A DNA stretch of 64,000 bases from Haliotis cracherodii (lineage: Eukaryota). Every line of letters starts with the position of its first letter. Position 1 is the first letter of the stretch. The stretch lies in contig NW_027266308.1 of assembly GCF_022045235.1 (NCBI RefSeq), forward strand, positions 57,598,001-57,662,000, given 5' to 3'. Shown here piece by piece: positions 9,079-42,238 of this stretch. Position numbers and translations under genes: made by a program. A model generated the notes under the pieces. That model saw nothing but the letters and a program-made list of their open reading frames with translations. It was not told the origin of the DNA and searched no databases.

Positions 9079-9126
9079 ACACCTATATCTTATGACTCTC
9101 AGTAACAGCTTGTCCAGCTTCTGTAC

Positions 9127-11700: not shown

Positions 11701-13231
11701 AGAAAGATAGTGCATCGGTGTGTACCCATATATTTAGCCCGTAAGCTCTCAATTAGTAATGAAAAACACGCGCTGATAATCGACATGCTTATGTGCCGTG
11801 CATACATTTAATACTGAATTAATCTCACACAATGTACATGAAAATGATATCACTCCGCAAGGGACCATTCATTACTTCACACGGCGGGATCCTTCGTTAA
11901 TTCAAACAACATCTGACGAGTGGACACACTGCTCTGTTTACAAGGAAATGTGGTGCTAAGAAACACACGCACGCACGCACACCAAACAAAAACACCTTAA
12001 GACTTTACATTGTATTTTAACACAAGCAAATGTTTCTAAATCATAAGAAAGTCTTGGTTTATATGTGCTAACGAGAAACTCACTCATGTTGCATCTCAAG
12101 TACATATGTATATAGCATGTATTATTGATGTATATTGACGCAGGGATTGAGCAATTTTAAAAGAAACAAAAACTTGTATTCGCCATGTTTCCCCTATTAA
12201 CACAGACCGAGGTAATTTATTTCATGGTCTCTGGTCTGATGCAGTATATCTGGGTATTATAAATAAAATTACCGGAGAAAAAGATAACGGTCCTCGGTTA
12301 AAATGTGTCCCCCGAACGACATGGACTTGTAGGATCTTGTAAACGATATGGCATACGTGAAACAGCAAGTGAATACCATTTATTCAAGGCATGCCCTATT
12401 TTGTACTATATTCAAAGTATATGCATGCGTGACCATGCTTAGCTAAATATAAGATGTCTGAAGTGAAAACCTCAAAGCGTTATGGTTAAAATATAATAGA
12501 TCTTAATTGACACTGTAATCCACATACAATTATATTATTTATGCGATCTCTGAGTGGTGATTCATGTCACATATCAAAATGTAAGTAATACATTCAATAC
12601 AAGCATGTACTATTTGCAGCTCAAGTGACTACTTGCATTGTTAGAATATATCTTTGATCACTGTCGCCTACCTTACAGCCTTTCGACATTACCAATTATT
12701 TCTAATTCAGATTATGCCGAACTTAAAACTTCTACTATTTTATGATTGTGTATGAGACCCTCACCTCTTTTATTTCTATGTCCTTCACACATATATTATT
12801 TTATGAACTTAAGAACTTATGGATGTCAACTTCTATACTATGATAAAACACATAGTGACGATGTTGACATCCACATATTCTCTTCCTTATGTGTATCACT
12901 TCTAAAAGTCTTTCAAAGACTTGATTCCGTATATCATTTATTGTTTTTCCTTGTTTGTTTCTATGATAACTGTATTATTTTATGATTGAGTATGATACCT
13001 GAAAAGTGCGTTTTTCTTTGATTGGATGTTTCCATGACAACCACACAGTGCAGTGCTCCTGGACGCTGTGAGGATTTTACAGTGATCACTACATGTACCA
13101 GACGCAGATAAGACGCCAGTCTCTGAACAAGACACAGTTTAATAGTGGACGGAATCTCCACACACGGCTATCTGACTGTGTGCATGCCAAGGAAGACAGA
13201 CAACAAACCACCTCACGTTTCATTCATTCCA

Positions 13232-13237
13232 TTTAAT
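13232..13237 (-). terminator. Probable polyadenylation signal ATTAAA of array copy 1 (present in every unit)
   Basis: About 245 nt after the stop, followed by a GU-rich tract GTGGTTTGTTGTCTGTC. Confidence 0.5.
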
Positions 13238-13480
13238 GTCTGCATATACCAAACTGGCAATATCAGACTTCGGTTATTAGAATGATGAAGTAATGCTTTA
13301 GAGAATTTTCAAATTACAAATAAAACAGGATTTACAGAAGTTGTATAATGTTTTCCATGTAATGAATTACAACATCATGATTTACAGGGATGTATAACGT
13401 CAGACAATATGTACAACTTCAAACAAATCAAATTAGATATACAGAAATTCAAACAGATTTTACAATACATGTGTATGTTT

Positions 13481-14757
13481 TCACACAGGGAGAACCTGGT
13501 TCTTGCTACTGACGATGTTCCTGATACACTGCACAACACGACCAAAGACAGAGTTGTGGCCAAATGTGTCTTTGACATGTGATTTGGCAGCAGAAACGTC
13601 TGTGGGTTTCACCTTGTTTTTGAATGCGATAGATGCCAGTCTAGTACGGACACTGGTGATGAAACGCCTGAGCTTCCCGGCTTTAGGGGGCAGGGTCGGG
13701 GGGACAAGTTCTCCCTGGACGAAGATCGGTGGCGGGAGAAGTCGCGAAAGCCTGTAGTGAGCGGCGGCCGATGTGACGGCGTTGTGGATTTCGATGAGTG
13801 AGTTGCGCACGCTTGGGTGGCGATCATTGCTGAGGAAAAGTTTGGACATCTGTGTCCAGCCACAATCAACCTCTCTCTGTAACATCCACAAATGTCGCTT
13901 GCATCTCTTGTTCTCAGTCACCTGTTATAAAGAAATAAACACACACATTGCACAGATCCATACAGTAAACCGTTTTCGATCACAAGAATTAACTTAAACT
14001 AATATGAGGACGAATGATGTTCTAAAAACATATTTGGTAAATTAAGTTTACTCCCCAGGTCCGTTTAGGGGCAAAGGAAATACCGGAATATGATGCTACA
14101 CCATCCTAATTATGCAGGCCGTACTGCTTACCTCATTTTCTTGGAGAATGGCAGCAGTCCGGATCAGATGGAGCCAAAGGCGGATGGCGTCAAACTCATC
14201 CAGAAGTTCACTGGTGAACAGATGCTGCAGGTCTGTAAGATGAAGTAAGTCTACAGTCTTAAATTACATCTCTTCACATTCAAACCTGCTGTTATACAGT
14301 CATACAGGAAGTTAACACAAATCACAATAAAATTCAAATGTATTACATTAATTTGGAGTAGGTTTGAAAATAAGATGCTCGTTATATTTCAGTTTGCCAT
14401 CAAGCTGGTCACATTCCTTTTTAACCTGTTCATTATGGAATCTGTTTCGGCAGATAATCCAGACTGATTATTCTTTGGGGTGGACGTTTTATACTTGTCA
14501 AAATTGTATCCACTGAGACAAACTTCAAGCTAAACTCTTCTCCATGAGACATCAATTAAATATCTTCATGAGCGATCACATGACTTATCTGATTAATTAT
14601 TGCCAGCGAAACGTTTGGAGAAGGGAGACGATAAATAACATTCCTTTTTCAAACATGAAATCGTTTTCTCGTTTTTAAAAATCACATTAACTGTAAAATG
14701 AAACTAACCTGGAGCTGTTCGTGCTCCTCGGAGCCAGTCGCGGCCACAAAACGTCAT
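13481..14757 (-). CDS. Orphan three-exon gene, copy 1 (196 aa); exons 14757-14709, 14232-14132, 13921-13481
   Basis: AAAATG start; CAG|GTTAGT, TTACAG|, GAG|GTAAGC and TAACAG| splice sites; phases 1 and 0 join into one frame: MTFCGRDWLRGARTAP-DLQHLFTSELLDEFDAIRLWLHLIRTAAILQENE-VTENKR...KNQVLPV. Carries a 3-nt in-frame insertion relative to the other copies. Confidence 0.8.
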
Positions 14758-14852
14758 TTTCAACACTTGCTTCAAGGAAAGATTCGCAAATATTCACTGA
14801 GCAAAACTGGAGCGTGTTGACATTACCGAATCAATGTCGGAGTGATTGTCGA

Positions 14853-14892
14853 TGACGTCATGTCATTGTGACGTCACGTAATTGTGACGCCA
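14853..14892. promoter_or_regulatory. CRE cluster upstream of copy 1 (two perfect TGACGTCA plus TGACGCCA, 16-bp spacing)
   Basis: Sites at 14853, 14869 and 14885, about 95-135 bp upstream of the ATG; Inr-like TCAGT near 14800. Confidence 0.7.
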
Positions 14893-16137
14893 TAGTACCA
14901 CGGGAGGTAACTGGATTCATTAAAGACACCCGTACCGCTAAATCAAACCATGTATATGGTCAAACCCTAGCAGTTTCTCATACTATGGGCATTTTTTTTT
15001 TAGGATTACTGAATACATGTTCCTGTGTTAAAGACATGGAAACTGTTTCACTTAAAATGAGAACAACTACATGACAGAACATGAGATATCGCCTGTATCT
15101 TGGACATAATGATGCAGGTGGCATTGTGGAGTTACTAGCGATCGCTGTTGTTCTCTTCTGTCTGGCACACCTACTTCTCATGCATGGTATATGGTCATTA
15201 AAATCTTCAGTGTCAGTGGGATATTGTGTATATGCCATAGTTTATTCAACAAGACATGTCCAAATAGCGGGAGGATTTTATGACCGCAACGCCAGGTGTC
15301 ATCGGTTTCAATTTACAATGATTGTCGAGTGACGCTTTTTTTGTGAATTCATGCTTCCAATTTGATCGGAATAGGCCTTTTTCTTGTGGTTGGTTGACAA
15401 GCATTGATAAGCATTGACACGTCAAGTCAAAGTCTCCCCTTCGATATCCCACATGCGTACAATGTGTGGAACCCATTCTGGGTTTTCTCTGTCGTGATTT
15501 CATTTGGACTATTGCCGAAAGCGGCGTAAAACCCTACTCATTCACTATTTCGTTCATGTGAAATGGACGAAATGAACAGTTTACATACAGTGTTTGTCTT
15601 CGTGTAGCAACTATCAAAGACATTCGGGTTCTTACTATATATGGCACCATCCCACTTATAGTGTATCTTTCCTCTTTTAGAAGACAGCTATACGACCACA
15701 CTAACAATCGTTTATGTAACACACATAGGTACAGAAATACTTTTTCTATTGCATGCAGATAAGACGCCAGTCTCTGAACAAGACACAGTTTAATAGTGGA
15801 CGGAATCTCCACACACGGCTATCTGACTGTGTGCATGCCAAGGACGACAGACAACAAACCACCTCACGTTTCATTCATTCCATTTAATGTCTGCATATAC
15901 GCGTACCAAACTGGCAATATGAGACTTCGGTTATAAGAATGATGAAGTAATGCTTTAGAGAAATTTCAAATTACAAATAAAACAGGATTTACAGAAGTTG
16001 TATAATGTTTTCCAAGTAATGAATTACAACATTATGATTTACAGGGATGTATAACGTCAGACAATATGTACAACTTCAAACAAATCAAATTAGATATACA
16101 GAAATTCAAACAGATTTTACAATACATGTGTATGTTT

Positions 16138-17401
16138 TCACACAGGGAGAACCTGGTTCTTGCTACTGGCGATGTTCCTGATACACTGCACAACACGACC
16201 AAAGACAGAGTTGTGGCCAAATGTGTCTTTGACATGTGATTTGGCAGCAGAAACGTCTGTGGGTTTCACCTTGTTTTTGAATGCGATAGATGCCAGTCTA
16301 GTACGGACACTGGTGATGAAACGCCTGAGCTTCCCGGCTTTAGGGGGCAGGGTCGGGGGGACAAGTTCTCCCTGAACGAAGATGGGTGGCGGGAGAAGTC
16401 GCGAAAGCCTGTAGTGAGCGGCGGCCGATGTGACGGCGTTGTGGATTTCGATGAGTGAGTTGCGCACGCTTGAGTGGCGATCATTGCTGAGGAAAAGTTT
16501 GGACATCTGTGTCCAGCCACAATCAACCTCTCTCTGTAACATCCACAAATGTCGCTTGCATCTCTTGTTCTCAGTCACCTGTTATAAAGAAATAAACACA
16601 CACATTGCACAGATCCATACAGTAAACCGTTTTCGATCACAAGAATTAACTTAAACTAATATGAGGACGAATGATGTTCTAAAAACATATTTGGTAAATT
16701 AAGCTTACTCCCCAGGTCCGTTTAGGGGCTAAGGAAATACCGGAATATGATGCTACACCATCCTAATCATGCAGGCCGTACTGCTTACCTCATTTTCTTG
16801 GAGAATGGCAGTCCGGATCAGATGGAGCCAAAGGCGGATGGCGTCAAACTCATCCAGAAGTTCACTGGTGAACAGATGCTGCAGGTCTGGAAGATGAAGT
16901 AAGCCTACGGTCTTAAATTACATCTCTTCACATTCAAAACCGCTGTTATAGGAAGTTAACACAAATCACAATAAAATTCAATTGCATTACATTAATTTGG
17001 AGTAAATTTGAAAATAAGATGCTCGTTATATTTGAGTTTGCCTTGAAGCTTATCACATTCCCTTTTAACCTGTTCATTATGGAATCTGTTTCGGCAGATA
17101 ATCCAGACTGATTATTCTTTGGGGTGGACGTTTTATACTTGTCAAAATTGTATCCACTGAGACAAACTTCAAGCTAAACTCTTCTCCATGAGACATCAAT
17201 TAAATATCTTCATGAGCGATCACATGACTTATCTGATTAATTATTGCCAGCGAAACGTTTGGAGAAGGGAGACGATAAATAACATTCCTTTTTCAAACAT
17301 GAAATCATTTTTTCGTTTTTAAAAATCACATTAACTGTAAAATGAAACTAACCTGGAGCTGTTCGTGCTCCTCGGAGCCAGTCGCGGCCACAAAACGTCA
17401 T
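16138..17401 (-). CDS. Orphan gene copy 2 (195 aa); exons 17401-17353, 16886-16789, 16578-16138
   Basis: Splice sites and frame intact. Confidence 0.8.
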
Positions 17402-18837: not shown

Positions 18838-20111
18838 TCACACAGGGAGAACCTGGTTCTTGCTACTGGCGATGATCCTGATACACTGCACAACACGACC
18901 AAAGACAGAGTTGTGGCCAAATGTGTCTTTGACATGTGATTTGGCAGCAGAAACGTCTGTGGGTTTCACCTTGTTTTTGGATGCGACGGATGCCAGTCTA
19001 GAACGGACACTGGTGATGAAACGCCTGAGCTTCCCGGCTTTTGGGGGCAGGGTCGGGGGGACAAGTTCTCCCTGGACGAAGATCGGTGGCGGGAGAAGTC
19101 GCGAAAGCCTGTAGTGAGCGGCGGCCGATGTGACGGCGTTGTGGATTTCGATGAGTGAGTTGCGCACGCTTGAGTGGCGATCATTGCTGAGGAAAAGTTT
19201 GGACATCTGTGTCCAGCCACAATCAACCTCTCTCTGTAACATCCACAAATGTCGCTTGCATCTCTTGTTCTCAGTCACCTGTTATAAAGAAATAAACACA
19301 CACATTGCACAGATCCATACAGTAAATCGTGTTCGATGACATGCATTAACTTAAACTAATATGAGGACGAATTACGTTCTAAAAACATATTTGGTAAATT
19401 AAGTTTACTCCCCAGGTCCGTTTAAGGGCAAAGGAAATATCGGAATATGATGCTACACCATCCTAATCATGCAGGCCGTACTGCTTACCTCATTTTCTTG
19501 GAGAATGGCAGTCCGGATCAGATGGAGCCAAAGGCGGATGGCGTCAAACTCATCTAGAAGTTCACTGGTGAACAGATGCTGCAGGTCTGGAATATGAAGT
19601 AAATCTACAGTTTTAAATTACATCTCTTCACATTCAAACCCGCTGTTATACAGTCATACAGGAAGTTAGCACAAATCACAATAAAATTCAAATGTATTAC
19701 ATTAATTTGGAGTAGGTTTGAAAATAAGATGCTCGTTATATTTGAGTTTGCCTTCAAGCTAATCACATTCCTTTTTAACCTGTTCATTATGGAATCTGTT
19801 TCGGCAGATAATCCAGACTGATTATTCTTTGGGGTGGACGTTTTATACTTGTCAATTTTGTATCCACTGAGACAAACTTCAAGCTAAACTCTTCTCCATG
19901 AGACATCAATTAAATATCTTCATGAGCGATCACATGACTTATCTGATTAATTATTGCCAGCGAAACGTTTGGAGAAGGGAGACGATAAATAACATTCCTT
20001 TTTCAAACATGAAATCGTTTTCTCGTTTTTAAAAATCACATTAACTGTAAAATGAAACTAACCTGGAGCTGTTCGTGCTCCTCGGAGCCAGTCGCGGCCA
20101 CAAAACGTCAT
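18838..20111 (-). CDS. Orphan gene copy 3; exons 20111-20063, 19586-19489, 19278-18838
   Basis: Splice sites and frame intact. Confidence 0.8.
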
Positions 20112-21540: not shown

Positions 21541-22814
21541 TCACACAGGGAGAACCTGGTTCTTGCTACTGGCGATGTTCCTGATACACTGCACAACACG
21601 ACCAAAGACAGAGTTGTGGCCAAATGTGTCTTTGACATGTGATTTGGCAGCAGAAACGTCTGTGGGTTTCACCTTGTTTTTGGATGCAACGAATGCCAGT
21701 CTAGAACGGACACTGGTGATGAAACGCCTGAGCTTCCCGGCTTTTGGGGGCAGGGTCGGGGGGACAAGTTCTCCCTGGACGAAGATCGGTGGCGGGAGAA
21801 GTCGCGAAAGCCTGTAGTGAGCGGCGGCCGATGTGACGGCGTTGTGGATTTCGATGAGTGAGTTGCGCACGCTTGGTAGGCGATCATTGCTGAGGAAAAG
21901 TTTGGACATCTGTGTCCAGCCACAATCAACCTCTCTCTGTAACATCCACAAATGTCGCTTGCATCTCTTGTTCTCAGTCACCTGTTATAAAGAAATAAAC
22001 ACACACATTGCACAGATCCATACAGTAAACCGTTTTCGATCACAAGAATTAACTTAAACTAATATGAGGACGAATTACGTTCTAAAAACATATTTGGTAA
22101 ATTAAGTTTACTCCCCAGGTCCGTTTAAGGGCAAAGGAAATATCGGAATATGATGCTACACCATCCTAATCATGCAGGCCGTACTGCTTACCTCATTTTC
22201 TTGGAGAATGGCAGTCCGGATCAGATGGAGCCAAAGGCGGATGGCGTCAAACTCATCTAGAAGTTCACTGGTGAACAGATGCTGCAGGTCTGGAATATGA
22301 AGTAAATCTACAGTCTTAAATTACATCTCTTCACATTCAAACCCGCTGTTATACAGTCATACAGGAAGTTAGCACAAATCACAATAAAATTCAAATGTAT
22401 TACATTAATTTGGAGTAGGTTTGAAAATAAGATGCTCGTTATATTTGAGTTTGCCTTCAAGCTAATCACATTCCTTTTTAACCTGTTCATTATGGAATCT
22501 GTTTCGGCAGATAATCCAGACTGATTATTCTTTGGGGTGGACGTTTTATACTTGTCAATTTTGTATCCACTGAGACAAACTTCAAGCTAAACTCTTCTCC
22601 ATGAGACATCAATTAAATATCTTCATGAGCGATCACATGACTTATCTGATTAATTATTGCCAGCGAAACGTTTGGAGAAGGGAGACGATAAATAACATTC
22701 CTTTTTCAAACATGAAATCGTTTTCTCGTTTTTAAAAATCACATTAACTGTAAAATGAAACTAACCTGGAGCTGTTCGTGCTCCTCGGAGCCAGTCGCGG
22801 CCACAAAACGTCAT
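21541..22814 (-). CDS. Orphan gene copy 4; exons 22814-22766, 22289-22192, 21981-21541
   Basis: Splice sites and frame intact. Confidence 0.8.
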
Positions 22815-24244: not shown

Positions 24245-25450
24245 TCACACAGGGAGAACCTGGTTCTTGCTACTGGCGATGTTCCTGATACACTGCACAA
24301 CACGACCAAAGACAGAGTTGTGGCCAAATGTGTCTTTGACATGTGATTTGGCAGCAGAAACGTCTGTGGGTTTCACCTTGTTTTTGGATGCAACGAATGC
24401 CAGTCTAGAACGGACACTGGTGATGAAACGCCTGAGCTTCCCGGCTTTTGGGGGCAGGGTCGGGGGGACAAGTTCTCCCTGGACGAAGATCGGTGGCGGG
24501 AGAAGTCGCGAAAGCCTGTAGTGAGCGGCGGCCGATGTGACGGCGTTGTGGATTTCGATGAGTGAGTTGCGCACGCTTGGTAGGCGATCATTGCTGAGGA
24601 AAAGTTTGGACATCTGTGTCCAGCCACAATCAACCTCTCTCTGTAACATCCACAAATGTCGCTTGCATCTCTTGTTCTCAGTCACCTGTTATAAAGAAAT
24701 AAACACACACATTGCACAGATCCATACAGTAAATCGTGTTCGATGACATGCATTAACTTAAACTAATATGAGGACGAATTACGTTCTAAAAACATATTTG
24801 GTAAATTAAGTTTACTCCCCAGGTCCGTTTAAGGGCAAAGGAAATGGCAGTCCGGATCAGATGGAGCCAAAGGCGGATGGCGTCAAACTCATCTAGAAGT
24901 TCACTGGTGAACAGATGCTGCAGGTCTGGAATATGAAGTAAATCTACAGTTTTAAATTACATCTCTTCACATTCAAACCCGCTGTTATACAGTCATACAG
25001 GAAGTTAGCACAAATCACAATAAAATTCAAATGTATTACATTAATTTGGAGTAGGTTTGAAAATAAGATGCTCGTTATATTTGAGTTTGCCTTCAAGCTA
25101 ATCACATTCCTTTTTAACCTGTTCATTATGGAATCTGTTTCGGCAGATAATCCAGACTGATTATTCTTTGGGGTGGACGTTTTATACTTGTCAATTTTGT
25201 ATCCACTGAGACAAACTTCAAGCTAAACTCTTCTCCATGAGACATCAATTAAATATCTTCATGAGCGATCACATGACTTATCTGATTAATTATTGCCAGC
25301 GAAACGTTTGGAGAAGGGAGACGATAAATAACATTCCTTTTTCAAACATGAAATCGTTTTCTCGTTTTTAAAAATCACATTAACTGTAAAATGAAACTAA
25401 CCTGGAGCTGTTCGTGCTCCTCGGAGCCAGTCGCGGCCACAAAACGTCAT
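24245..25450 (-). pseudogene. Orphan gene copy 5; 68-bp deletion removes the end of exon 2 and its splice donor
   Basis: At about 24845 the sequence reads AAAGGAAAT-GGCAGTCC, lacking the segment containing CTTACCTC found in all other copies; span is 68 bp shorter. Confidence 0.7.
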
Positions 25451-26879: not shown

Positions 26880-28153
26880 TCACACAGGGAGAACCTGGTT
26901 CTTGCTACTGGCGATGTTCCTGATACACTGCACAACACGACCAAAGACAGAGTTGTGGCCAAATGTGTCTTTGACATGTGATTTGGCAGCAGAAACGTCT
27001 GTGGGTTTCACCTTGTTTTTGGATGCAACGAATGCCAGTCTAGAACGGACACTGGTGATGAAACGCCTGAGCTTCCCGGCTTTTGGGGGCAGGGTCGGGG
27101 GGACAAGTTCTCCCTGGACGAAGATCGGTGGCGGGAGAAGTCGCGAAAGCCTGTAGTGAGCGGCGGCCGATGTGACGGCGTTGTGGATTTCGATGAGTGA
27201 GTTGCGCACGCTTGGTAGGCGATCATTGCTGAGGAAAAGTTTGGACATCTGTGTCCAGCCACAATCAACCTCTCTCTGTAACATCCACAAATGTCGCTTG
27301 CATCTCTTGTTCTCAGTCACCTGTTATAAAGAAATAAACACACACATTGCACAGATCCATACAGTAAACCGTTTTCGATCACAAGAATTAACTTAAACTA
27401 ATATGAGGACGAATTACGTTCTAAAAACATATTTGGTAAATTAAGTTTACTCCCCAGGTCCGTTTAAGGGCAAAGGAAATATCGGAATATGATGCTACAC
27501 CATCCTAATCATGCAGGCCGTACTGCTTACCTCATTTTCTTGGAGAATGGCAGTCCGGATCAGATGGAGCCAAAGGCGGATGGCGTCAAACTCATCTAGA
27601 AGTTCACTGGTGAACAGATGCTGCAGGTCTGGAATATGAAGTAAATCTACAGTCTTAAATTACATCTCTTCACATTCAAACCCGCTGTTATACAGTCATA
27701 CAGGAAGTTAGCACAAATCACAATAAAATTCAAATGTATTACATTAATTTGGAGTAGGTTTGAAAATAAGATGCTCGTTATATTTGAGTTTGCCTTCAAG
27801 CTAATCACATTCCTTTTTAACCTGTTCATTATGGAATCTGTTTCGGCAGATAATCCAGACTGATTATTCTTTGGGGTGGACGTTTTATACTTGTCAATTT
27901 TGTATCCACTGAGACAAACTTCAAGCTAAACTCTTCTCCATGAGACATCAATTAAATATCTTCATGAGCGATCACATGACTTATCTGATTAATTATTGCC
28001 AGCGAAACGTTTGGAGAAGGGAGACGATAAATAACATTCCTTTTTCAAACATGAAATCGTTTTCTCGTTTTTAAAAATCACATTAACTGTAAAATGAAAC
28101 TAACCTGGAGCTGTTCGTGCTCCTCGGAGCCAGTCGCGGCCACAAAACGTCAT
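26880..28153 (-). CDS. Orphan gene copy 6; exons 28153-28105, 27628-27531, 27320-26880
   Basis: Splice sites and frame intact. Confidence 0.8.
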
Positions 28154-29583: not shown

Positions 29584-30857
29584 TCACACAGGGAGAACCT
29601 GGTTCTTGCTACTGGCGATGTTCCTGATACACTGCACAACACGACCAAAGACAGAGTTGTGGCCAAATGTGTCTTTGACATGTGATTTGGCAGCAGAAAC
29701 GTCTGTGGGTTTCACCTTGTTTTTGGATGCAACGAATGCCAGTCTAGAACGGACACTGGTGATGAAACGCCTGAGCTTCCCGGCTTTTGGGGGCAGGGTC
29801 GGGGGGACAAGTTCTCCCTGGACGAAGATCGGTGGCGGGAGAAGTCGCGAAAGCCTGTAGTGAGCGGCGGCCGATGTGACGGCGTTGTGGATTTCGATGA
29901 GTGAGTTGCGCACGCTTGGTAGGCGATCATTGCTGAGGAAAAGTTTGGACATCTGTGTCCAGCCACAATCAACCTCTCTCTGTAACATCCACAAATGTCG
30001 CTTGCATCTCTTGTTCTCAGTCACCTGTTATAAAGAAATAAACACACACATTGCACAGATCCATACAGTAAATCGTGTTCGATGACATGCATTAACTTAA
30101 ACTAATATGAGGACGAATTACGTTCTAAAAACATATTTGGTAAATTAAGTTTACTCCCCAGGTCCGTTTAAGGGCAAAGGAAATATCGGAATATGATGCT
30201 ACACCATCCTAATCATGCAGGCCGTACTGCTTACCTCATTTTCTTGGAGAATGGCAGTCCGGATCAGATGGAGCCAAAGGCGGATGGCGTCAAACTCATC
30301 TAGAAGTTCACTGGTGAACAGATGCTGCAGGTCTGGAATATGAAGTAAATCTACAGTCTTAAATTACATCTCTTCACATTCAAACCCGCTGTTATACAGT
30401 CATACAGGAAGTTAGCACAAATCACAATAAAATTCAAATGTATTACATTAATTTGGAGTAGGTTTGAAAATAAGATGCTCGTTATATTTGAGTTTGCCTT
30501 CAAGCTAATCACATTCCTTTTTAACCTGTTCATTATGGAATCTGTTTCGGCAGATAATCCAGACTGATTATTCTTTGGGGTGGACGTTTTATACTTGTCA
30601 ATTTTGTATCCACTGAGACAAACTTCAAGCTAAACTCTTCTCCATGAGACATCAATTAAATATCTTCATGAGCGATCACATGACTTATCTGATTAATTAT
30701 TGCCAGCGAAACGTTTGGAGAAGGGAGACGATAAATAACATTCCTTTTTCAAACATGAAATCGTTTTCTCGTTTTTAAAAATCACATTAACTGTAAAATG
30801 AAACTAACCTGGAGCTGTTCGTGCTCCTCGGAGCCAGTCGCGGCCACAAAACGTCAT
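29584..30857 (-). CDS. Orphan gene copy 7; exons 30857-30809, 30332-30235, 30024-29584
   Basis: Splice sites and frame intact. Confidence 0.8.
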
Positions 30858-32281
30858 TTTCAACACTTGCTTCAAGGAAAGATTCGCAAATATTCACTGA
30901 GCAAAACTGGAGCGTGTTGACATTACCGAATCAATGTCGGAGTGATTGTCGATGACGTCATGTCATTGTGACGTCACGTAATTGTGACGTCATAGTACCA
31001 CGGGAGGTAACTGGATTCATTAAAGACACCCGTACCGCTAAATCAAACCATTTGTAAGGTCAAACCCTAGCAGTTCCTTCATACTATGGGCAGTGTTTTT
31101 TTAGGATTACTGAATACATGTTCCTGTGTTAAAGACATGGAAACTGTTTCACTTAAAATGAGAACAACAGAACATGAGATATCGCCTGTATCTTGGACAT
31201 AATGAAGCAGGTGGCATTGTGGAGTTACTAGCGATCGCTGTTGTTCTCTTCTGTCTGGCACACCTACTTTTCATGCATGGTATATGGTCATTAAAATCTT
31301 CAGTGTCAGTGGGATATTGTGTATATGCCATAGTTTATTCAACACGACATGTCCAAATAGCGGGAGGATTTTATGACCGCAACGCCAGGTGTCACCGGTT
31401 TCAATTTACAATGATTGTCGAGTGACGCTTTTTTTGTGAATTCATGCTTCCAATTTGATCGGAATAGGCCTTTTTCTTGTGGTTGGTTGACAAGCATTGA
31501 TAAGCATTGACACGTCAAGTCAAAGTCTCCTCTTCGATATCCCACATGTGTACAATGTGTGGAACCCATTCTGGGTTTTCTCTGTCGTGATTTCAGTTGG
31601 AATATTGCCGAAAGCGGCGTAAAAAAAATTCTCATATACTGTTTCGTTCATGTGACATGGACGAAATGAACAGTTTACCTATAGTGTTCGTCTTCGTGTA
31701 GCAACTATCAAGTTTATGTTATTTGTCTTCGTCCAATTCCGCATCTTCTACAAAGACATTCATGTACTTACTATATATGGCACCATCCCACCTACAGCAT
31801 ATCTTTCCTCTTTTAGAAGCAGCTATACGACCACACTAACAATCGTTTATGTAACACACATAGGTACAGAAATACTTTTTCTATTGCATGCAGATAAGAC
31901 GCCAGTCTCTGAACAAGACACAGTCTAATAGTGGACGGAATCTCCATACACGGCTATCTGACTGTGTGCATGCCAAGGACGACAGACAACAAACCACCTC
32001 ACGTTTCATTCATTCCATTTAATGTCTGCATATACCAAACTGGCAATATGAGACTTCCGTTATAAGAATGACGAAGTAATGCTTTAGAGAAATTTCAAAT
32101 TACAAATAAAACAGGATTTACAGAAGTTGTATAATGTTTTCCATGTAATGAATTACGACATTATGATTTGCAGAGATGTATAACGTCAGACAATATGTAC
32201 AATTTCAAACAAATCAAATTAAATATACAGAAATTCCAATAGGTTTTACAATACATGTTTTTGTTTTCACACTGCATGTTT

Positions 32282-33555
32282 TCACACAGGGAGAACCTGG
32301 TTCTTGCTACTGGCGATGTTCCTGATACACTGCACAACACGACCAAAGACAGAGTTGTGGCCAAATGTGTCTTTGACATGTGATTTGGCAGCAGAAACGT
32401 CTGTGGGTTTCACCTTGTTTTTGGATGCGACGGATGCCAGTCTAGAACGGACACTGGTGATGAAACGCCTGAGCTTCCCGGCTTTTGGGGGCAGGGTCGG
32501 GGGGACAAGTTCTCCCTGGACGAAGATGGGTGGCGGGAGAAGTCGCGAAAGCCTGTAGTGAGCGGCGGCCGATGTGACGGCGTTGTGGATTTCGATGAGT
32601 GAGTTGCGCACGCTTGGTAGGCGATCATTGCTGAGGAAAAGTTTGGACATCTGTGTCCAGCCACAATCAACCTCTCTCTGTAACATCCACAAATGTCGCT
32701 TGCATCTCTTGTTCTCAGTCACCTGTTATAAAGAAATAAACACACACATTGCACAGATCCATACAGTAAATCGTGTTCGATGACATGCATTAACTTAAAC
32801 TAATATGAGGACGAATTACGTTCTAAAAACATATTTGGTAAATTAAGTTTACTCCCCAGGTCCGTTTAAGGGCAAAGGAAATATCGGAATATGATGCTAC
32901 ACCATCCTAATCATGCAGGCCGTACTGCTTACCTCATTTTCTTGGAGAATGGCAGTCCGGATCAGATGGAGCCAAAGGCGGATGGCGTCAAACTCATCTA
33001 GAAGTTCACTGGTGAACAGATGCTGCAGGTCTGGAATATGAAGTAAATCTACAGTCTTAAATTACATCTCTTCACATTCAAACCCGCTGTTATACAGTCA
33101 TACAGGAAGTTAGCACAAATCACAATAAAATTCAAATGTATTACATTAATTTGGAGTAGGTTTGAAAATAAGATGCTCGTTATATTTGAGTTTGCCTTCA
33201 AGCTAATCACATTCCTTTTTAACCTGTTCATTATGGAATCTGTTTCGGCAGATAATCCAGACTGATTATTCTTTGGGGTGGACGTTTTATACTTGTCAAT
33301 TTTGTATCCACTGAGACAAACTTCAAGCTAAACTCTTCTCCATGAGACATCAATTAAATATCTTCATGAGCGATCACATGACTTATCTGATTAATTATTG
33401 CCAGCGAAACGTTTGGAGAAGGGAGACGATAAATAACATTCCTTTTTCAAACATGAAATCGTTTTCTCGTTTTTAAAAATCACATTAACTGTAAAATGAA
33501 ACTAACCTGGAGCTGTTCGTGCTCCTCGGAGCCAGTCGCGGCCACAAAACGTCAT
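32282..33555 (-). CDS. Orphan gene copy 8; exons 33555-33507, 33030-32933, 32722-32282
   Basis: Splice sites and frame intact. Confidence 0.8.
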
Positions 33556-34966
33556 TTTCAACACTTGCTTCAAGGAAAGATTCGCAAATATTCACTGAGC
33601 AAAACTGGAGCGTGTTGACATTACCGAATCAATGTCGGAGTGATTGTCGATGACGTCATGTCATTGTGACGTCACGTAATTGTGACGTCATAGTACCACG
33701 GGAGGTAACTGGATTCATTAAAGACACCCGTACCGCTAAATCAAACCATTTGTAAGGTCAAACCCTAGCAGTTCCTTCATACTATGGGCAGTGTTTTTTT
33801 AGGATTACTGAATACATGTTCCTGTGTTAAAGACATGGAAACTGTTTCACTTAAAATGAGAACAACAGAACATGTATCTTGGACATAATGAAGCAGGTGG
33901 CATTGTGGAGTTACTAGCGATCGCTGTTGTTCTCTTCTGTCTGGCACACCTACTTTTCATGCATGGTATATGGTCATTAAAATCTTCAGTGTCAGTGGGA
34001 TATTGTGTATATGCCATAGTTTATTCAACACGACATGTCCAAATAGTGGGAGGATTTTATGACCGCAACGCCAGGTGTCACCGGTTTCAATTTACAATGA
34101 TTGTCGAGTGACGCTTTTTTGTGAATTCATGCTTCCAATTTGATCGGAATAGGCCTTTTTCTTGTGGTTGGTTGACAAGCATTGATAAGCATTGACACGT
34201 CAAGTCAAAGTCTCCTCTTCGATATCCCACATGTGTACAATGTGTGGAACCCATTCTGGGTTTTCTCTGTCGTGATTTCAGTTGGAATATTGCCGAAAGC
34301 GGCGTAAAAAAAATTCTCATATACTGTTTCGTTCATGTGACATGGACGAAATGAACAGTTTACCTATAGTGTTCGTCTTCGTGTAGCAACTATCAAGTTT
34401 ATGTTATTTGTCTTCGTCCAATTCCGCATCTTCTACAAAGACATTCATGTACTTACTATATATGGCACCATCCCACCTACAGCATATCTTTCCTCTTTTA
34501 GAAGCAGCTATACGACCACACTAACAATCGTTTATGTAACACACATAGGTACAGAAATACTTTTTCTATTGCATGCAGATAAGACGCCAGTCTCTGAACA
34601 AGACACAGTCTAATAGTGGACGGAATCTCCATACACGGCTATCTGACTGTGTGCATGCCAAGGACGACAGACAACAAACCACCTCACGTTTCATTCATTC
34701 CATTTAATGTCTGCATATACCAAACTGGCAATATGAGACTTCCGTTATAAGAATGACGAAGTAATGCTTTAGAGAAATTTCAAATTACAAATAAAACAGG
34801 ATTTACAGAAGTTGTATAATGTTTTCCATGTAATGAATTACGACATTATGATTTGCAGAGATGTATAACGTCAGACAATATGTACAATTTCAAACAAATC
34901 AAATTAAATATACAGAAATTCCAATAGGTTTTACAATACATGTTTTTGTTTTCACACTGCATGTTT

Positions 34967-36240
34967 TCACACAGGGAGAACCTGGTTCTTGCTACTGGCG
35001 ATGTTCCTGATACACTGCACAACACGACCAAAGACAGAGTTGTGGCCAAATATGTCTTTGACATGTGATTTGGCAGCAGAAACGTCTGTGGGTTTCACCT
35101 TGTTTTTGGATGCGACGGATGCCAGTCTAGAACGGACACTGGTGATGAAACGCCTGAGCTTCCCGGCTTTTGGGGGCAGGGTCGGGGGGACAAGTTCTCC
35201 CTGGACGAAGATCGGTGGCGGGAGAAGTCGCGAAAGCCTGTAGTGAGCGGCGGCCGATGTGACGGCGTTGTGGATTTCGATGAGTGAGTTGCGCACGCTT
35301 GGGTGGCGATCATTGCTGAGGAAAAGTTTGGACATCTGTGTCCAGCCACAATCAACCTCTCTCTGTAACATCCACAAATGTCGCTTGCATCTCTTGTTCT
35401 CAGTCACCTGTTATAAAGAAATAAACACACACATTGCACAGATCCATACAGTAAATCGTGTTCGATGACATGCATTAACTTAAACTAATATGAGGACGAA
35501 TTACGTTCTAAAAACATATTTGGTAAATTAAGTTTACTCCCCAGGTCCGTTTAAGGGCAAAGGAAATATCGGAATATGATGCTACACCATCCTAATCATG
35601 CAGGCCTTACTGCTTACCTCATTTTCTTGGAGAATGGCAGTCCGGATCAGATGGAGCCAAAGGCGGATGGCGTCAAACTCATCTAGAAGTTCACTGGTGA
35701 ACAGATGCTGCAGGTCTGGAATATGAAGTAAATCTACAGTCTTAAATTACATCTCTTCACATTCAAACCCGCTGTTATACAGTCATACAGGAAGTTAGCA
35801 CAAATCACAATAAAATTCAAATGTATTACATTAATTTGGAGTAGGTTTGAAAATAAGATGCTCGTTATATTTGAGTTTGCCTTCAAGCTAATCACATTCC
35901 TTTTTAACCTGTTCATTATGGAATCTGTTTCGGCAGATAATCCAGACTGATTATTCTTTGGGGTGGACGTTTTATACTTGTCAATTTTGTATCCACTGAG
36001 ACAAACTTCAAGCTAAACTCTTCTCCATGAGACATCAATTAAATATCTTCATGAGCGATCACATGACTTATCTGATTAATTATTGCCAGCGAAACGTTTG
36101 GAGAAGGGAGACGATAAATAACATTCCTTTTTCAAACATGAAATCGTTTTCTCGTTTTTAAAAATCACATTAACTGTAAAATGAAACTAACCTGGAGCTG
36201 TTCGTGCTCCTCGGAGCCAGTCGCGGCCACAAAACGTCAT
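34967..36240 (-). CDS. Orphan gene copy 9; exons 36240-36192, 35715-35618, 35407-34967
   Basis: Splice sites and frame intact. Confidence 0.8.
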
Positions 36241-37651: not shown

Positions 37652-38925
37652 TCACACAGGGAGAACCTGGTTCTTGCTACTGGCGATGTTCCTGATACAC
37701 TGCACAACACGACCAAAGACAGAGTTGTGGCCAAATGTGTCTTTGACATGTGATTTGGCAGCAGAAACGTCTGTGGGTTTCACCTTGTTTTTGGATGCGA
37801 CGGATGCCAGTCTAGAACGGACACTGGTGATGAAACGCCTGAGCTTCCCGGCTTTTGGGGGCAGGGTCGGGGGGACAAGTTCTCCCTGGACGAAGATGGG
37901 TGGCGGGAGAAGTCGCGAAAGCCTGTAGTGAGCGGCGGCCGATGTGACGGCGTTGTGGATTTCGATGAGTGAGTTGCGCACGCTTGGTAGGCGATCATTG
38001 CTGAGGAAAAGTTTGGACATCTGTGTCCAGCCACAATCAACCTCTCTCTGTAACATCCACAAATGTCGCTTGCATCTCTTGTTCTCAGTCACCTGTTATA
38101 AAGAAATAAACACACACATTGCACAGATCCATACAGTAAATCGTGTTCGATGACATGCATTAACTTAAACTAATATGAGGACGAATTACGTTCTAAAAAC
38201 ATATTTGGTAAATTAAGTTTACTCCCCAGGTCCGTTTAAGGGCAAAGGAAATATCGGAATATGATGCTACACCATCCTAATCATGCAGGCCGTACTGCTT
38301 ACCTCATTTTCTTGGAGAATGGCAGTCCGGATCAGATGGAGCCAAAGGCGGATGGCGTCAAACTCATCTAGAAGTTCACTGGTGAACAGATGCTGCAGGT
38401 CTGGAATATGAAGTAAATCTACAGTCTTAAATTACATCTCTTCACATTCAAACCCGCTGTTATACAGTCATACAGGAAGTTAGCACAAATCACAATAAAA
38501 TTCAAATGTATTACATTAATTTGGAGTAGGTTTGAAAATAAGATGCTCGTTATATTTGAGTTTGCCTTCAAGCTAATCACATTCCTTTTTAACCTGTTCA
38601 TTATGGAATCTGTTTCGGCAGATAATCCAGACTGATTATTCTTTGGGGTGGACGTTTTATACTTGTCAATTTTGTATCCACTGAGACAAACTTCAAGCTA
38701 AACTCTTCTCCATGAGACATCAATTAAATATCTTCATGAGCGATCACATGACTTATCTGATTAATTATTGCCAGCGAAACGTTTGGAGAAGGGAGACGAT
38801 AAATAACATTCCTTTTTCAAACATGAAATCGTTTTCTCGTTTTTAAAAATCACATTAACTGTAAAATGAAACTAACCTGGAGCTGTTCGTGCTCCTCGGA
38901 GCCAGTCGCGGCCACAAAACGTCAT
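37652..38925 (-). CDS. Orphan gene copy 10; exons 38925-38877, 38400-38303, 38092-37652
   Basis: Splice sites and frame intact. Confidence 0.8.
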
Positions 38926-40338
38926 TTTCAACACTTGCTTCAAGGAAAGATTCGCAAATATTCACTGAGCAAAACTGGAGCGTGTTGACATTACCGAATC
39001 AATGTCGGAGTGATTGTCGATGACGTCATGTCATTGTGACGTCACGTAATTGTGACGTCATAGTACCACGGGAGGTAACTGGATTCATTATAGACACCCG
39101 TACCGCTAAATCAAACCATTTGTAAGGTCAAACCCTAGCAGTTCCTTCATACTATGGGCAGTGTTTTTTTAGGATTACTGAATACATGTTCCTGTGTTAA
39201 AGACATGGAAACTGTTTCACTTAAAATGAGAACAACAGAACATGAGATATCGCCTGTATCTTGGACATAATGAAGCAGGTGGCATTGTGGAGTTACTAGC
39301 GATCGCTGTTGTTCTCTTCTGTCTGGCACACCTACTTCTCATGCATGTTATATGGTCATTAAAATCTTCAGTGTCAGTGGGATATTGTGTATATGCCATA
39401 GTTTATTCAACACGACATGTCCAAATAGCGGGAGGATTTTATGACCGCAACGCCAGGTGTCACCGGTTTCAATTTACAATGATTGTCGAGTGACGCTTTT
39501 TTTTGTGAATTCATGCTTCCAATTTGATCGGAATAGGCCTTTTTCTTGTGGTTGGTTGACAAGCATTGACAAGCATTGACACGTCAAGTCAAAGTCTCCT
39601 CTTCGATATCCCACATGTGTACAATGTGTGGAACCCATTCTGGGTTTTCTCTGTCGTTATTTCAGTTGGAATATTGCCGAAAGCGGCGTAAAACCCTACT
39701 CATTCACTGTTTCGTTCATGTGACATGGACGAAATGAACAGTTTACCTATAGTGTTCGTCTTCGTGTAGCGACTATCAAGTTTATGTTATTTGTCTTCGT
39801 CCAATTCCGCATCTTCTACAAAGACATTCAGGTACTTACTATATATGGCACCATCCCACCTACAGCATATCTTTCCTCTTTTTAGAAGCAGCTATACGAC
39901 CACACTAACAATCGTTTATGTTACACACATAGGTACAGAAATACTTTTTCTATTGCATGCAGATAAGACGCCAGTCTCTGAACAAGACACAGTTTAATAG
40001 TGGACGGAATCTCCACACACGGCTATCTGACTGTGTGCATGCCAAGGAAGACAGACAACAAACCACCTCACGTTTCATTCATTCCATTTAATGTCTGCAT
40101 ATACCAAACTGGCAATATCAGACTTCGGTTGTTAGAATGATGAAATAGTAATGCTTTAGAGAAATTTCAAATTACAAATAAAACAGGATTTACAGAAGTT
40201 GTATAATGTTTTCCATGTAATGAATTACAACATCATGATTTACAGGGATGTATCACGTCAGACAATATGTACAATTTCAAACAAATCAAATTAAATATAC
40301 AGAAATTCCAATAGGTTTTACAATACATGTGGATGTTT

Positions 40339-41595
40339 TCACACAGGGAGAACCTGGTTCTTGCTACTGGCGATGTTTCTGATACACTGCACAACACGAC
40401 CAAAGACAGAGTTGTGGCCAGGTGTGTCTTTGACATGTGATTTGTCAGCAGAAACGTCTGTGGGTTTCACCTTGTTTTTGAATGTGATAGATGCCAGTCT
40501 AGTACGGACACTGGTGATGAAACGCCTGAGCTTCCCGGCTTTTGGGGGCAGGGTCGGGGGCACAAGTTCTCCCTGATCGAAGATGGGTGGCGGGAGAAGT
40601 CGCAAAAGCCTGTAGTGAGCGGCGGCCGATGTGACGGCGTTGTGGATTTCGATGAGTGAGTTGCGCACGCTTGGGTGGCGATCATTGCTGAGGAAAAGTT
40701 TGGACATTTGTGTCCAGCCACAATCAACCTCTCTCTGTAACATCCACAGATGTCGCTTGCCTCTCTTGCTCTCAGTCACCTGTTATAAAGAAATAAACAC
40801 ACACATTGCACAGATCCATACACTAAATCGTGTTCGATGACATACATTAACTTAAACTAATATGAGGACGAATGACGTTCTAAAAACATATTTAGTAAAT
40901 TAAGTTTACTCCCCAGGTCCGTTTAGGGGCAAAGGAAATATCGGAATATGATGCTACACCATCCTAATCATGCAGGCCGTAGTCCTTACCTCATTTTCTT
41001 GGAGAATGGCAGTCCGGATCAGATGGAGCCAAAGGCGGATAGCGTCAAACTCATCTAGAAGTTCACTGGTGAACAGATGCTGCAGGTCTGGAAGTTGAAG
41101 TAAGTCTACAGTTTTAAATTACATCTCTTCACATTCAAACCCGCTGTCATACAGTCATACAGGAAGTTAGGACAAATCACAATAAAATTCAAATGCATTA
41201 CATTAATTTGGAGTAGGTTTGAAAATAAGATACTCGTTATATTTGGGTTTGCCTTCAAGCTAATCACATTCCTTTTTAACCTGTTCATTATGGAATCTGT
41301 TTCGGCAGATCCAGACTTATTATTCTTGGCGGTGGACGTTTTATACTTGTACGTTAAATAGTATCCATTGAGACAAACTTTACGCTAAAATCTTCTCCAT
41401 GAGGCATCAATTAAATATCTTCATGAGCGCTCACATGACTTTGGAGAAACGTTTGGAGAAGGGAGACGATAAATAACATTCCTTTTTTAAACATGAAATC
41501 ATTTTCTCGTTTTTAAAAATCACATTAACTGTAAAATGAAACTCACCTGGAGCTGTTCGTGCTCCTCGGAGCCAGTCGCGGCCACAAAACGTCAT
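40339..41595 (-). CDS. Orphan gene copy 11 (most divergent); exons 41595-41547, 41087-40990, 40779-40339
   Basis: Frame intact; exon-1 donor is the consensus CAG|GTGAGT, exon-2 donor GAG|GTAAGG. Confidence 0.8.
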
Positions 41596-41690
41596 TTTCA
41601 ACACTTGCTTCAAGGTAAGATTCGCAAAGAATCATTGAGCAAAACTGGAGCGTGTTGACATTACAGAATCAATGTCGGAGTGATTGTAGA

Positions 41691-41714
41691 TGACGTCATG
41701 TCATTGTGACGTCA
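41691..41714. promoter_or_regulatory. Double CRE between array copy 11 and APMAP
   Basis: TGACGTCA at 41691 and 41707. Confidence 0.65.
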
Positions 41715-42238
41715 TAGTACCACGGGAGGTAATTGGATTCATTAAATGTCATAGAAATAAACCGGTTCCATCAAAATACAATCGCTCTTTGCCTCCCTTC
41801 TTTTAACCGCCGTGATATTGCCGGAATATTGCTAAAAGCAGTGTAAAATCATACTCACTCACTCTTTTTTTATGCTAAATATATTTTGAAGCAGATAAAG
41901 TGCACCGATTTAATGAGCTGAGTTGCAGAAGTGGATCCTATCGTTCTTACCAGTAGATGAGATGTGTTGATTTTAGTAAAGTACAGATACAGAAGAAAAT
42001 ACTGATGGAATTCAACTCTTTAATAAAGAACCTTTACAATAGAGCTTTTGAGGTCTCTTGTTTAATTATGCAGACTGTATGGCATTTTAAGCTTGATAAT
42101 ACAATGCATTTCGTACATTTATTACAAATATAGATAAGAACCATATGGGTCAATGTCACACACGCAATACAAAAATAACGTTTAGCGGTATCTTTCATAT
42201 AAGTTGAGTTGTGTCCCTTTGAAAGTTTGCCGAGCAGC

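What the first reader, a model, noticed from the sequence alone, without database searches (positions are those of the whole stretch)
13104..41746. Eleven-copy tandem array of an unrecognised three-exon gene between BTBD9 and APMAP
Seen in sequence: the repeated 146-aa track ORF is only the last exon (its GTG follows a TAACAG acceptor). Two upstream exons (49 nt, and 98 or 101 nt) with GT-AG sites and matching phases give a 195-196 aa protein, MTFCGRDWLRGARTAP-DLQHLFTSELLDEFDAIRLWLHLIRTAILQENE-VTENKR...KNQVLPV. Each unit also has a CRE-rich upstream region and an ATTAAA/GU-rich 3' end. Ten of 11 copies are intact. Among those ten the only coding indel is 3 nt, while introns and spacers carry many frame-breaking indels. 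I see no signal peptide and no domain I recognise. Inference: a lineage-specific gene recently amplified for dosage, resembling the ampliconic germline/sperm gene arrays known in other animals.
Basis: partly seen in the sequence, partly recalled or inferred. Interest (0 to 1): 0.88.

Follow-up and report, generated by a model that had tools for sequence, protein, structure and literature searches.

The report
Abalone-only gene in 11-copy tandem array

Summary
Window 13104-41744 is a head-to-tail array of eleven ~2.7-kb units that are 97-100% identical. Each unit carries a minus-strand three-exon gene (49 + 98/101 + 441 nt, GT-AG introns) coding for 195-196 aa.

- **Splicing:** contigs from two other abalone organisms show exactly the predicted junctions.
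- **Species and annotation:** the window is Haliotis cracherodii. Eight of the eleven copies match RefSeq "uncharacterized protein" entries exon piece by piece, so the gene is annotated but unstudied.
- **Family:** an HMM profile search of 1.84 billion proteins found only Haliotis proteins. This genome has 15 members: 11 in the array, one singleton 125 kb away and three distant paralogs on another contig. All 15 have the same exon layout.
- **Promoter:** 2-3 perfect CRE palindromes sit upstream of exon 1 or exon 2, 70-135 bp before the ATG in the array, the singleton and paralog C.
- **Constraint:** coding sequence is conserved three-fold better than introns and promoter (p = 1e-9); pN/pS is about 0.3-0.6.
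- **Protein:** 22 kDa, pI 10.3, no signal peptide or membrane span. It has a confident N-terminal three-helix bundle with an invariant LPPP motif and a basic, variable tail. There is no Pfam, PDB or fold match.
- **Array history:** the central units were duplicated or homogenised recently; the edge units are older.

Dosage selection and germline expression remain untested. This is a new member of a known kind, of moderate interest.

The parts
13104..41744 (-). Tandem array: ten full ~2.7-kb units plus a final gene-only unit (U11)
   Evidence: limits by local alignment, unit identity 96.9-100% among U01-U10.
13481..14757 (-). Gene U01, CDS span (exon 2 is 101 nt; 196 aa); older edge copy
16138..17401 (-). 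Gene U02, CDS span (195 aa)
18838..20111 (-). Gene U03, CDS span (195 aa); unit 99.8% identical to U05
21541..22814 (-). Gene U04, CDS span; whole unit 100% identical to U06; product matches P0023
24245..25450 (-). Gene U05, CDS span. A 68-bp deletion (junction at 24845/24846) removes the normal exon-2 donor. An in-frame cryptic GT donor after 24816 would give 199 aa (matches P0024)
26880..28153 (-). Gene U06, CDS span (matches P0023)
29584..30857 (-). Gene U07, CDS span (matches P0023)
32282..33555 (-). Gene U08, CDS span (matches P0002). Exons are 33507-33555, 32933-33030 and 32282-32722. Spliced contigs were laid on this copy
   Evidence: joints 32722/32933 and 33030/33507, CT..AC on the plus strand..
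34967..36240 (-). Gene U09, CDS span (matches P0001)
37652..38925 (-). Gene U10, CDS span (matches P0002)
40339..41595 (-). Gene U11, CDS span (matches P0004). Divergent edge copy; shares only ~150 bp of upstream sequence with the other units
33651..33690 (.). CRE cluster of U08: three perfect TGACGTCA palindromes 16 bp apart, 96-135 bp upstream of the ATG. The same cluster is in every unit (two sites in U01 and U11)
   Evidence: The singleton has the same triplet; paralogs have CRE pairs.
32018..32023 (-). ATTAAA poly(A) signal of U08, followed by a GT-rich stretch; present 244-265 nt after the stop in all 11 units
   Evidence: The RNA-like contigs of X1 and X6 do not extend below about 32081.
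34188..34320 (.). Fragment of a dispersed repeat inside the inter-gene spacer, amplified together with the unit
   Evidence: 643 first-look candidates genome-wide, the 30 scored hits outside the array at 75-84% identity; depth spike.
33233..33276 (.). Fragment of a high-copy dispersed repeat inside intron 1
   Evidence: depth spike with many loose ends.
6214..10548 (-). Flanking BTB/BACK-domain gene exons (BTBD9-like)
47178..50819 (+). Flanking strictosidine-synthase-like (APMAP-like) gene exons

Best explanation
Shown:
- This is a real, transcribed, correctly spliced protein-coding gene in black abalone.
- It belongs to a 15-member family that the protein databases hold only for Haliotis.
- Eleven copies form a head-to-tail array of a 2.7-kb unit. 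Each unit holds a CRE-bearing promoter, three exons, a 3' UTR and a spacer with transposon fragments.
- The protein is about 22 kDa, basic and non-secreted. Its conserved ~125-aa N-terminal domain has a near-invariant Cys4, a three-helix bundle and an invariant LPPP motif. A variable basic tail follows, ending in a V-x-P-x motif.

Inferred:
- The array grew by unequal crossing-over. An old duplication left the edge copies (U11, U01, U02). Later rounds expanded or homogenised U03-U10, including a 5.4-kb two-unit duplication (U03-U04 to U05-U06).
- Transcription is driven by a CREB/ATF-type bZIP factor bound to the CRE triplet. Extra copies raise the output of one nearly identical product (a dosage effect).
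- The N-domain is a protein-binding module, and the basic amphipathic tail docks the protein on membranes or cytoskeleton.

The cell type and the partner are unknown.
For: - Copies and frames.
- Exact spliced junctions in a 588-nt contig of run X1, with no intron coverage. Run X6, from another organism and study, shows the exon 1-2 junction as a joint, and a loose end at 32931 that reads the start of exon 3.
- Words of the stretch occur in 14 RNA-guessed runs from 6 studies and 4 organisms.
- RefSeq H. cracherodii proteins match 8 of 11 copies.
- The profile search of 1.84e9 proteins found 5 clusters, all Haliotis.
- The genome holds 12 subfamily-A genes plus 3 paralogs, all with the same three-exon layout.
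- Exon-1 and exon-2 residues are invariant across subfamilies.
- Singleton versus array: coding 3.4% versus promoter plus introns 11.9% mismatches, p = 1.3e-9.
- pN/pS is 0.3-0.6; exon 2 has only synonymous changes.
- Within the array, coding sequence has fewer substitutions (p = 0.014) and fewer indels (P = 0.016) than non-coding.
- CRE sites: 31 of the window's 32, where about 1.2 are expected for the whole window. They recur upstream of the first located coding exon of the singleton and all three paralogs.
- AlphaFold2 core pLDDT is 84-96 (residues 31-80) and 85-95 (residues 91-120), and all five models agree.
- pI 10.3, tail pI 11.7, no hydrophobic span.
- U03-U10 form a clade; the edge copies are unresolved among H. 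rufescens copies.
- A tandem joint is present in DNA runs of another abalone organism from two studies.
Against: - No tissue, protein-level or functional data exist.
- Dosage benefit is pure inference.
- pN/pS in the tail is near 1 (11 non-synonymous to 4 synonymous), and U05 has lost its normal donor, so some copies may be drifting.
- Three RNA-guessed runs carrying the window's own species label hold almost none of the words.
- CRE pairs at this spacing are common genome-wide, mostly inside a dispersed repeat, so CREs alone do not prove regulated transcription.
- Copy number rests on one HiFi assembly, and U04 and U06 are 100% identical.
- Restriction to Haliotis rests on annotated proteomes only.
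Confidence: 0.72

Rival explanations
1. The array is a germline or sperm-specific ampliconic gene family. It is expressed post-meiotically from CRE (CREM-like) promoters, evolves fast, and is amplified by sexual selection or genomic conflict.
For: - Near-identical tandem copies of a small lineage-restricted gene.
- A TATA-less promoter with CREs about 100 bp upstream, read from the sequence; CREM-dependent spermatid genes are recalled from general knowledge, not tested.
- Fast protein divergence between abalone species, 77-84% identity to H. rubra and H. asinina, concentrated in the tail.
- Absence from three same-species RNA-guessed runs could mean tissue restriction.
- The C-terminal V-x-P-x motif is conserved in subfamilies A and D.
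Against: - No tissue information at all.
- pN/pS is below 1 overall.
- No signal peptide and no likeness to the known abalone sperm proteins lysin and sp18.
- Sex linkage is unknown.
- CRE clusters are widespread in this genome.
Confidence: 0.15
2. The gene is real, but the high copy number is a selectively neutral, young structural variant produced by unequal crossing-over. The extra copies are redundant and have begun to decay.
For: - U05 has lost its donor.
- The tail evolves nearly neutrally among copies.
- Within-array coding versus intron differences are weak for single pairs (p = 0.13-0.14).
- U04 and U06 are identical, implying very recent duplication.
- H. rubra and H. asinina have only two annotated copies each.
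Against: - All 11 copies keep open frames, splice sites, CRE clusters and poly(A) signals.
- Coding indels are depleted.
- Arrays persist in at least two further abalone lineages.
Confidence: 0.25
3. The copy number is inflated by assembly error, that is, haplotypes or reads mis-stacked in a repeat.
For: - Units U04 and U06 are 100% identical and U03 and U05 are 99.8% identical.
- The 28.6-kb array is longer than the 15-20 kb HiFi reads used for the published black abalone assembly (PMC9709981).
Against: - Most units carry their own substitutions and indels.
- RefSeq lists at least six distinct array protein variants.
- DNA contigs of another abalone organism close on themselves across the unit junction.
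- H. rufescens has five consecutive annotated loci on one scaffold.
Confidence: 0.07
4. The repeat is a satellite or transposon, and the ORF is fortuitous or belongs to a mobile element.
For: The unit contains fragments of dispersed repeats, and the CRE core resembles that of a dispersed CRE-bearing repeat over about 40 bp.
Against: - The ORF occurs only at 15 loci, all with conserved intron positions.
- No transposase, reverse-transcriptase or other Pfam domain.
- The mRNA is spliced.
- Constraint acts at protein level.
- Paralogs at 31-47% identity keep the motif set.
Confidence: 0.02

Closest known systems
Ampliconic / tandemly amplified lineage-specific gene arrays in animals (examples recalled from general knowledge: Drosophila Sdic and Stellate, mouse Slx/Sly, primate TSPY)
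   Same: Head-to-tail, near-identical copies of a small, taxonomically restricted gene that carries its own promoter. The centre of the array is homogenised and the edge copies are older.
   Different: Germline-restricted expression, sex linkage and conflict-driven evolution, which characterise those arrays, are untested here. pN/pS is below 1.
Abalone sperm acrosomal proteins lysin and sp18
   Same: Haliotis-restricted, small, basic, helical-bundle proteins that diverge quickly between species.
   Different: No signal peptide. No sequence match to any PDB chain in the profile search at E up to 10, and lysin and sp18 are absent from the fold-search hit lists. The gene structure is different.
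CRE-driven (CREB/ATF/CREM) promoters
   Same: Two or three perfect TGACGTCA palindromes lie 70-135 bp upstream of the ATG in the array, the singleton and paralog C, and farther upstream of the first located coding exon in paralogs B and D.
   Different: Factor binding and cAMP responsiveness are untested. Similar CRE clusters are spread through this genome by a dispersed repeat.
RefSeq 'uncharacterized protein' models LOC124141002-7 and LOC124140965 (H. rufescens), XP_0710813xx (H. cracherodii), LOC124284427 and LOC124259412 (H. rubra)
   Same: These are the same gene. Eight window copies match the H. cracherodii models exon piece by piece.
   Different: The annotation gives no name, domain or function. 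No paper in the searchable library cites these identifiers.

Membership tests
Any Pfam family or solved-structure family | Significant profile match | tested here: not met
   Pfam gave 0 families at E up to 10 for exon-3 products. The PDB profile search gave only a chance hit at E 1.9. The ESM Atlas gave no usable hit.
Any known fold family | Structural match standing above the helical-bundle background | tested here: inconclusive
   Foldseek against PDB found nothing at E <= 1e-3 for either model. The best VIA-align Z was 10.0 (pectin methylesterase inhibitor), below the ~13 level that the tool gives as background for helical bundles.
Abalone lysin / sp18 | Signal peptide and secretion | tested here: not met
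   The N-terminus is polar and charged and is conserved as a motif. The highest 19-residue Kyte-Doolittle mean is 0.77.
Abalone lysin / sp18 | Sequence or fold similarity to solved lysin or sp18 structures | tested here: not met
   Neither appears in the PDB profile hits or in the listed hits of three fold searches.
Transposable-element protein | Transposase, RT, integrase or other TE domain; many dispersed copies | tested here: not met
   No Pfam domain. Only 15 loci genome-wide, all with conserved introns.
Ampliconic germline gene array | Multiple near-identical tandem copies of an intact gene | tested here: met
   Eleven copies at 97-100% identity, all with open frames.
Ampliconic germline gene array | Germline- or testis-restricted expression | not testable with these tools
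   Run metadata are coded and give no tissue.
Ampliconic germline gene array | Sex-chromosome linkage or sex-specific copy number | not tested
   No sexed DNA data were available.
CREB/ATF-regulated gene | Full palindromic CRE(s) in the proximal promoter | tested here: met
   Two or three per unit, 96-135 bp before the ATG. None of 100 shuffles reached 32 sites. The sites are conserved in the singleton and the paralogs.
CREB/ATF-regulated gene | Factor occupancy or cAMP inducibility | not testable with these tools
   Needs ChIP or a reporter assay.
   Subfamily A ends in QVLPV, QILPV or RVLPM and subfamily D ends in KVAPL. The motif is absent from subfamilies B and C.
   No membrane span. Only a near-invariant Cys4 that could be acylated. 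Localisation is untestable here.

The most novel reading that the evidence does not exclude
The family founds a new abalone-specific protein domain: Cys4, a three-helix bundle and the LPPP[IV][FVY] motif. The tandemly amplified, CRE-driven subfamily A would supply large amounts of a lipid-anchored basic protein, targeted by V-x-P-x, to sperm flagella or larval or gill cilia. Copy number and the fast-changing tail would then differ between species and contribute to reproductive or ecological divergence in a free-spawning group already known for rapid evolution of fertilisation proteins.
Probability: 0.1. Interest if true: 0.6.

Novelty: new member of a known kind. Interest (0 to 1): 0.35.

Why it matters
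Abalone are a classic model for the rapid evolution of reproductive proteins and are of conservation concern. A 15-member protein family restricted to the genus has one branch amplified to 11 near-identical copies and a conserved CRE promoter. It is a tractable case for asking how orphan genes arise, gain regulation and expand. The array may also serve as a copy-number marker between species and populations. As it stands, it is one more unstudied lineage-specific tandem array, and automated pipelines have already annotated it.

Tried and rejected
- **Bacterial-type scan:** the promoter/terminator scan is irrelevant for a eukaryote and was ignored.
- **Global intron alignment:** singleton-versus-array alignment gave ~30% divergence and p ~ 1e-41. 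I rejected this as inflated. Alignment A3 shows that part of intron 2 has been replaced by unrelated sequence. I recomputed on local homologous blocks.
- **ESM Atlas:** two searches, no usable hit.
- **Papers:** two searches for the LOC and XP identifiers found none. The abalone gene copy-number paper PMC9936805 has no passage on this family for the terms tried.
- **Spacer origin:** the 850-bp spacer has no homologue in either array flank apart from a dispersed-repeat fragment, so the first duplication junction could not be reconstructed.
- **Protein tree:** too short to resolve orthology between H. cracherodii and H. rufescens copies.
- **Copy number from depth:** not possible.
Full report
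**1. The observation**

The window has no N stretches. Eleven 146-aa ORFs lie on the minus strand, 2635-2704 bp apart. Aligned whole units are 96.9-100% identical among U01-U10. Local alignment puts the array limits at 13104 and 41744.

- Exon 1 (49 nt) is letter-identical in all eleven copies.
- Exon 2 is 98 nt, or 101 nt in U01.
- All four splice sites per gene are GT..AG, and the phases give an open 195-196-aa frame.

In one search a script concatenated the exons only to check length, frame and stops. Searches used exon 3 by reference, or database proteins returned by the tools.

U05 has a 68-bp deletion that removes 18 nt of exon 2 and its donor. The read-through meets an in-frame GT donor after 24816, which would give 199 aa. 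That is exactly the RefSeq model P0024.

**2. Is it expressed and spliced?**

I laid a single unit, 31950-34634.
- Run X1 (organism A) has one 588-nt contig lying on 32305-32720, 32931-33030 and 33507-33574. The skipped parts end CT..AC on the plus strand, which is GT..AG on the minus strand. There is no intron coverage apart from high-copy repeat spikes.
- Run X6 (organism C, a different study) shows the 33030/33507 joint. It also has a loose end at 32931 that reads the start of exon 3.

These are exactly the predicted junctions. Words of the stretch occur in 14 RNA-guessed runs from 6 studies and 4 organisms. Three RNA-guessed runs carrying the window's own species label hold almost none, which may point to tissue restriction.

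Runs X15 and X16 (organism B, two studies) cover exons and introns alike, so they are DNA. Their contigs run from 34634 back to 31950, so the tandem junction also exists in that abalone.

**3. What organism, and is the gene known?**

The exon-3 product finds eight proteins, all Haliotis "uncharacterized protein" entries of 190-195 aa. Cluster look-up gives their RefSeq accessions. For eight of the eleven copies, all three exon pieces match H. cracherodii proteins.

So the gene is annotated but unstudied. No paper in the library cites the LOC or XP identifiers.

H. rufescens has five annotated copies on one 1.9-Mb scaffold, with LOC numbers between 124141002 and 124141007, plus one elsewhere. 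H. rubra and H. asinina have two each.

**4. The family**

A six-frame search of the whole genome finds the 11 array copies, a twelfth copy 125 kb away on the opposite strand, and three distant paralogs on contig C12. That makes fifteen genes in all.

An HMM profile of the family, searched against 1.84 billion representative proteins, finds five clusters, all from Haliotis. They fall into four subfamilies:
- A: the 195-aa array type.
- B: 237-314 aa.
- C: 196-200 aa.
- D: 566 aa.

The paralogs have the same three-exon layout, although exon 1 of paralog D was not located.

The full-length alignment shows these conserved positions:
- Invariant: M1, E25, R34, W36, L37, S75, L91, V98, A102, L111, P112, P114, G119.
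- Near-invariant: C4, W8, P113, I115, F116.

The residues encoded by exons 1 and 2 are therefore conserved at 31-47% overall identity. That independently validates the gene model.

There is no Pfam match, no PDB sequence match and no ESM Atlas look-alike.

**5. Constraint**

Between the singleton and U08, coding sequence differs at 20 of 588 sites (3.4%). Promoter and intron sequence differ at 115 of 963 sites (11.9%) in locally homologous blocks (Fisher p = 1.3e-9). An earlier global-alignment figure was discarded, because part of intron 2 has been replaced.

Pairwise pN/pS in exon 3 is 0.3-0.6. Exon 2 has only synonymous changes. Non-synonymous changes are concentrated in the C-terminal tail:
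- Helical core part of exon 3: 6 non-synonymous to 6 synonymous.
- Tail: 11 non-synonymous to 4 synonymous.

Within U01-U10, coding columns vary less than non-coding ones (2.7% against 5.1%, p = 0.014). Indels avoid coding sequence: 1 event where 5.5 are expected (P = 0.016).

**6. The protein**

The product is 22 kDa with pI 10.3. The tail alone has pI 11.7. There is no hydrophobic span and no signal peptide.

With the 13-sequence alignment, AlphaFold2 gives a three-helix bundle (residues 24-104). The LLPPPIF segment packs against it. By 10-residue blocks, pLDDT is 84-96 for residues 31-80 and 85-95 for residues 91-120, dipping to 75 over 81-90. All five models agree (an earlier, weaker model is).

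The tail has low confidence and contains two amphipathic helices. Foldseek finds nothing at E <= 1e-3. The best VIA-align Z is 10, within the helical-bundle background the tool describes. Lysin and sp18 do not appear in any hit list.

Subfamilies A and D share a C-terminal module that ends in V-x-P-x. Without a membrane span or localisation data it remains a hypothesis.

**7. Promoter and 3' end**

Thirty-one of the window's 32 perfect TGACGTCA sites lie in the array. There are three per unit, 16 bp apart and 96-135 bp before the ATG; U01 and U11 have two. About 1.2 sites are expected for the whole window.

CREs elsewhere in the family:
- The singleton has the same triplet.
- Paralog C has two CREs 71-103 bp before its ATG.
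- Paralog B has a pair about 0.75 kb upstream of exon 1.
- Paralog D has a pair, 16 bp apart, about 2.1 kb upstream of exon 2; its exon 1 was not located.

Caveat: CRE-N8-CRE occurs 284 times in the genome against 6 for the control pattern. Most of the sites I sampled belong to one dispersed ~300-420-bp repeat that carries CRE clusters. The array promoter shares only the ~40-bp CRE core with that repeat.

ATTAAA followed by a GT-rich stretch lies 244-265 nt after each stop. The X1 and X6 contigs, which cover only exons, end above it.

**8. History of the array**

- U04 and U06 are identical, and U03 and U05 are 99.8% identical, which points to a recent 5.4-kb two-unit duplication.
- U03-U10 form a clade. 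U01, U02 and U11 are unresolved among H. rufescens copies.
- U11 is as far from U01-U10 (pS 0.05-0.08) as the singleton is, and it shares only ~150 bp of upstream sequence with them.
- Organism B's units differ from U08 by about 4%. That is more than the differences among U03-U10.
- Each spacer and intron 1 carry dispersed-repeat fragments, which were copied along with the unit.
- The spacer has no match in the array flanks.

Together these suggest an old duplication, followed by recent unequal crossing-over or homogenisation in the black abalone lineage.

**9. Verdict**

"Unrecognised" is wrong in the sense that RefSeq already lists the genes. "Lineage-specific and recently amplified" is supported. 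"For dosage, germline-like" is untested.

The most likely mechanism is CRE-driven transcription of many near-identical copies, yielding a non-secreted basic protein whose conserved N-domain is a binding module. Function is inferred only weakly.

Noticed in passing
Genome-wide; examples L020-L030 and L033 (G000 contigs C1-C4): A dispersed ~300-420-bp repeat family (pairwise identity mostly 75-96%) carries clusters of two to four perfect or near-perfect CRE sites (TGACGTCA) at roughly 16-bp spacing. The CRE-N8-CRE pattern occurs 284 times in the genome against 6 for the reversed control. This mobile element could seed cAMP-responsive promoters.
   Followed up: partly
G000:C5:3455502-3583929 (L031, L032): Four CRE pairs with the same spacer lie 26-57 kb apart. 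Two of the sampled loci are 97% identical over 686 bp, which suggests another segmental or tandem duplication with a CRE promoter.
   Followed up: no
window 3679-5074; 46438-47217; 194-471: A 26-bp satellite (53.6 copies), a 68-bp tandem repeat (11.5 copies, next to an APMAP-like exon) and a 138-bp duplication.
   Followed up: no
window 1658-3187 (minus strand): A GC-rich block (57% GC) with a 340-aa ORF rich in Pro, Ser and Gly and ending in a basic tail. Long ORFs overlap it in other frames. No Pfam match. It could be a retroelement gag-like gene or an unrelated exon.
   Followed up: partly
window 63733-63996 (minus strand): An ORF fragment that reads like the C-terminal part of a Tc1/mariner-type transposase (motif HDNARPH ... 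WPARSHDISPIEH). This is judged by eye only.
   Followed up: no
window 33507-33934 (run X6, record 28): In organism C a 450-nt contig runs from the exon-1 donor to about 380 nt upstream of the ATG, through the CRE cluster. This suggests a second, upstream transcription start or a longer 5' UTR in that species.
   Followed up: no
G000:C45:57472034-57473682 (L018 6034-7682): The singleton twelfth copy lies on the opposite strand, 125 kb from the array. It is intact, has a longer intron 1 (823 nt against 476) and has the same CRE triplet. It resembles H. rufescens LOC124140965 (shared MTYCG N-terminus), possibly its orthologue.
   Followed up: partly
G000:C12:35240182-35254720 (L015, L016, L019): Paralogs B and D lie 12 kb apart on opposite strands. 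Paralog D has a long Ser/Pro-rich insert with a repeated L-P-P-L-x-I-S-P-R-S-T motif between the conserved N-domain and the shared C-terminal module.
   Followed up: partly
window 51388-51934 (minus strand): Overlapping ORFs made of G-W-G-G-V repeats, that is, a low-complexity GC-rich microsatellite-like stretch.
   Followed up: no
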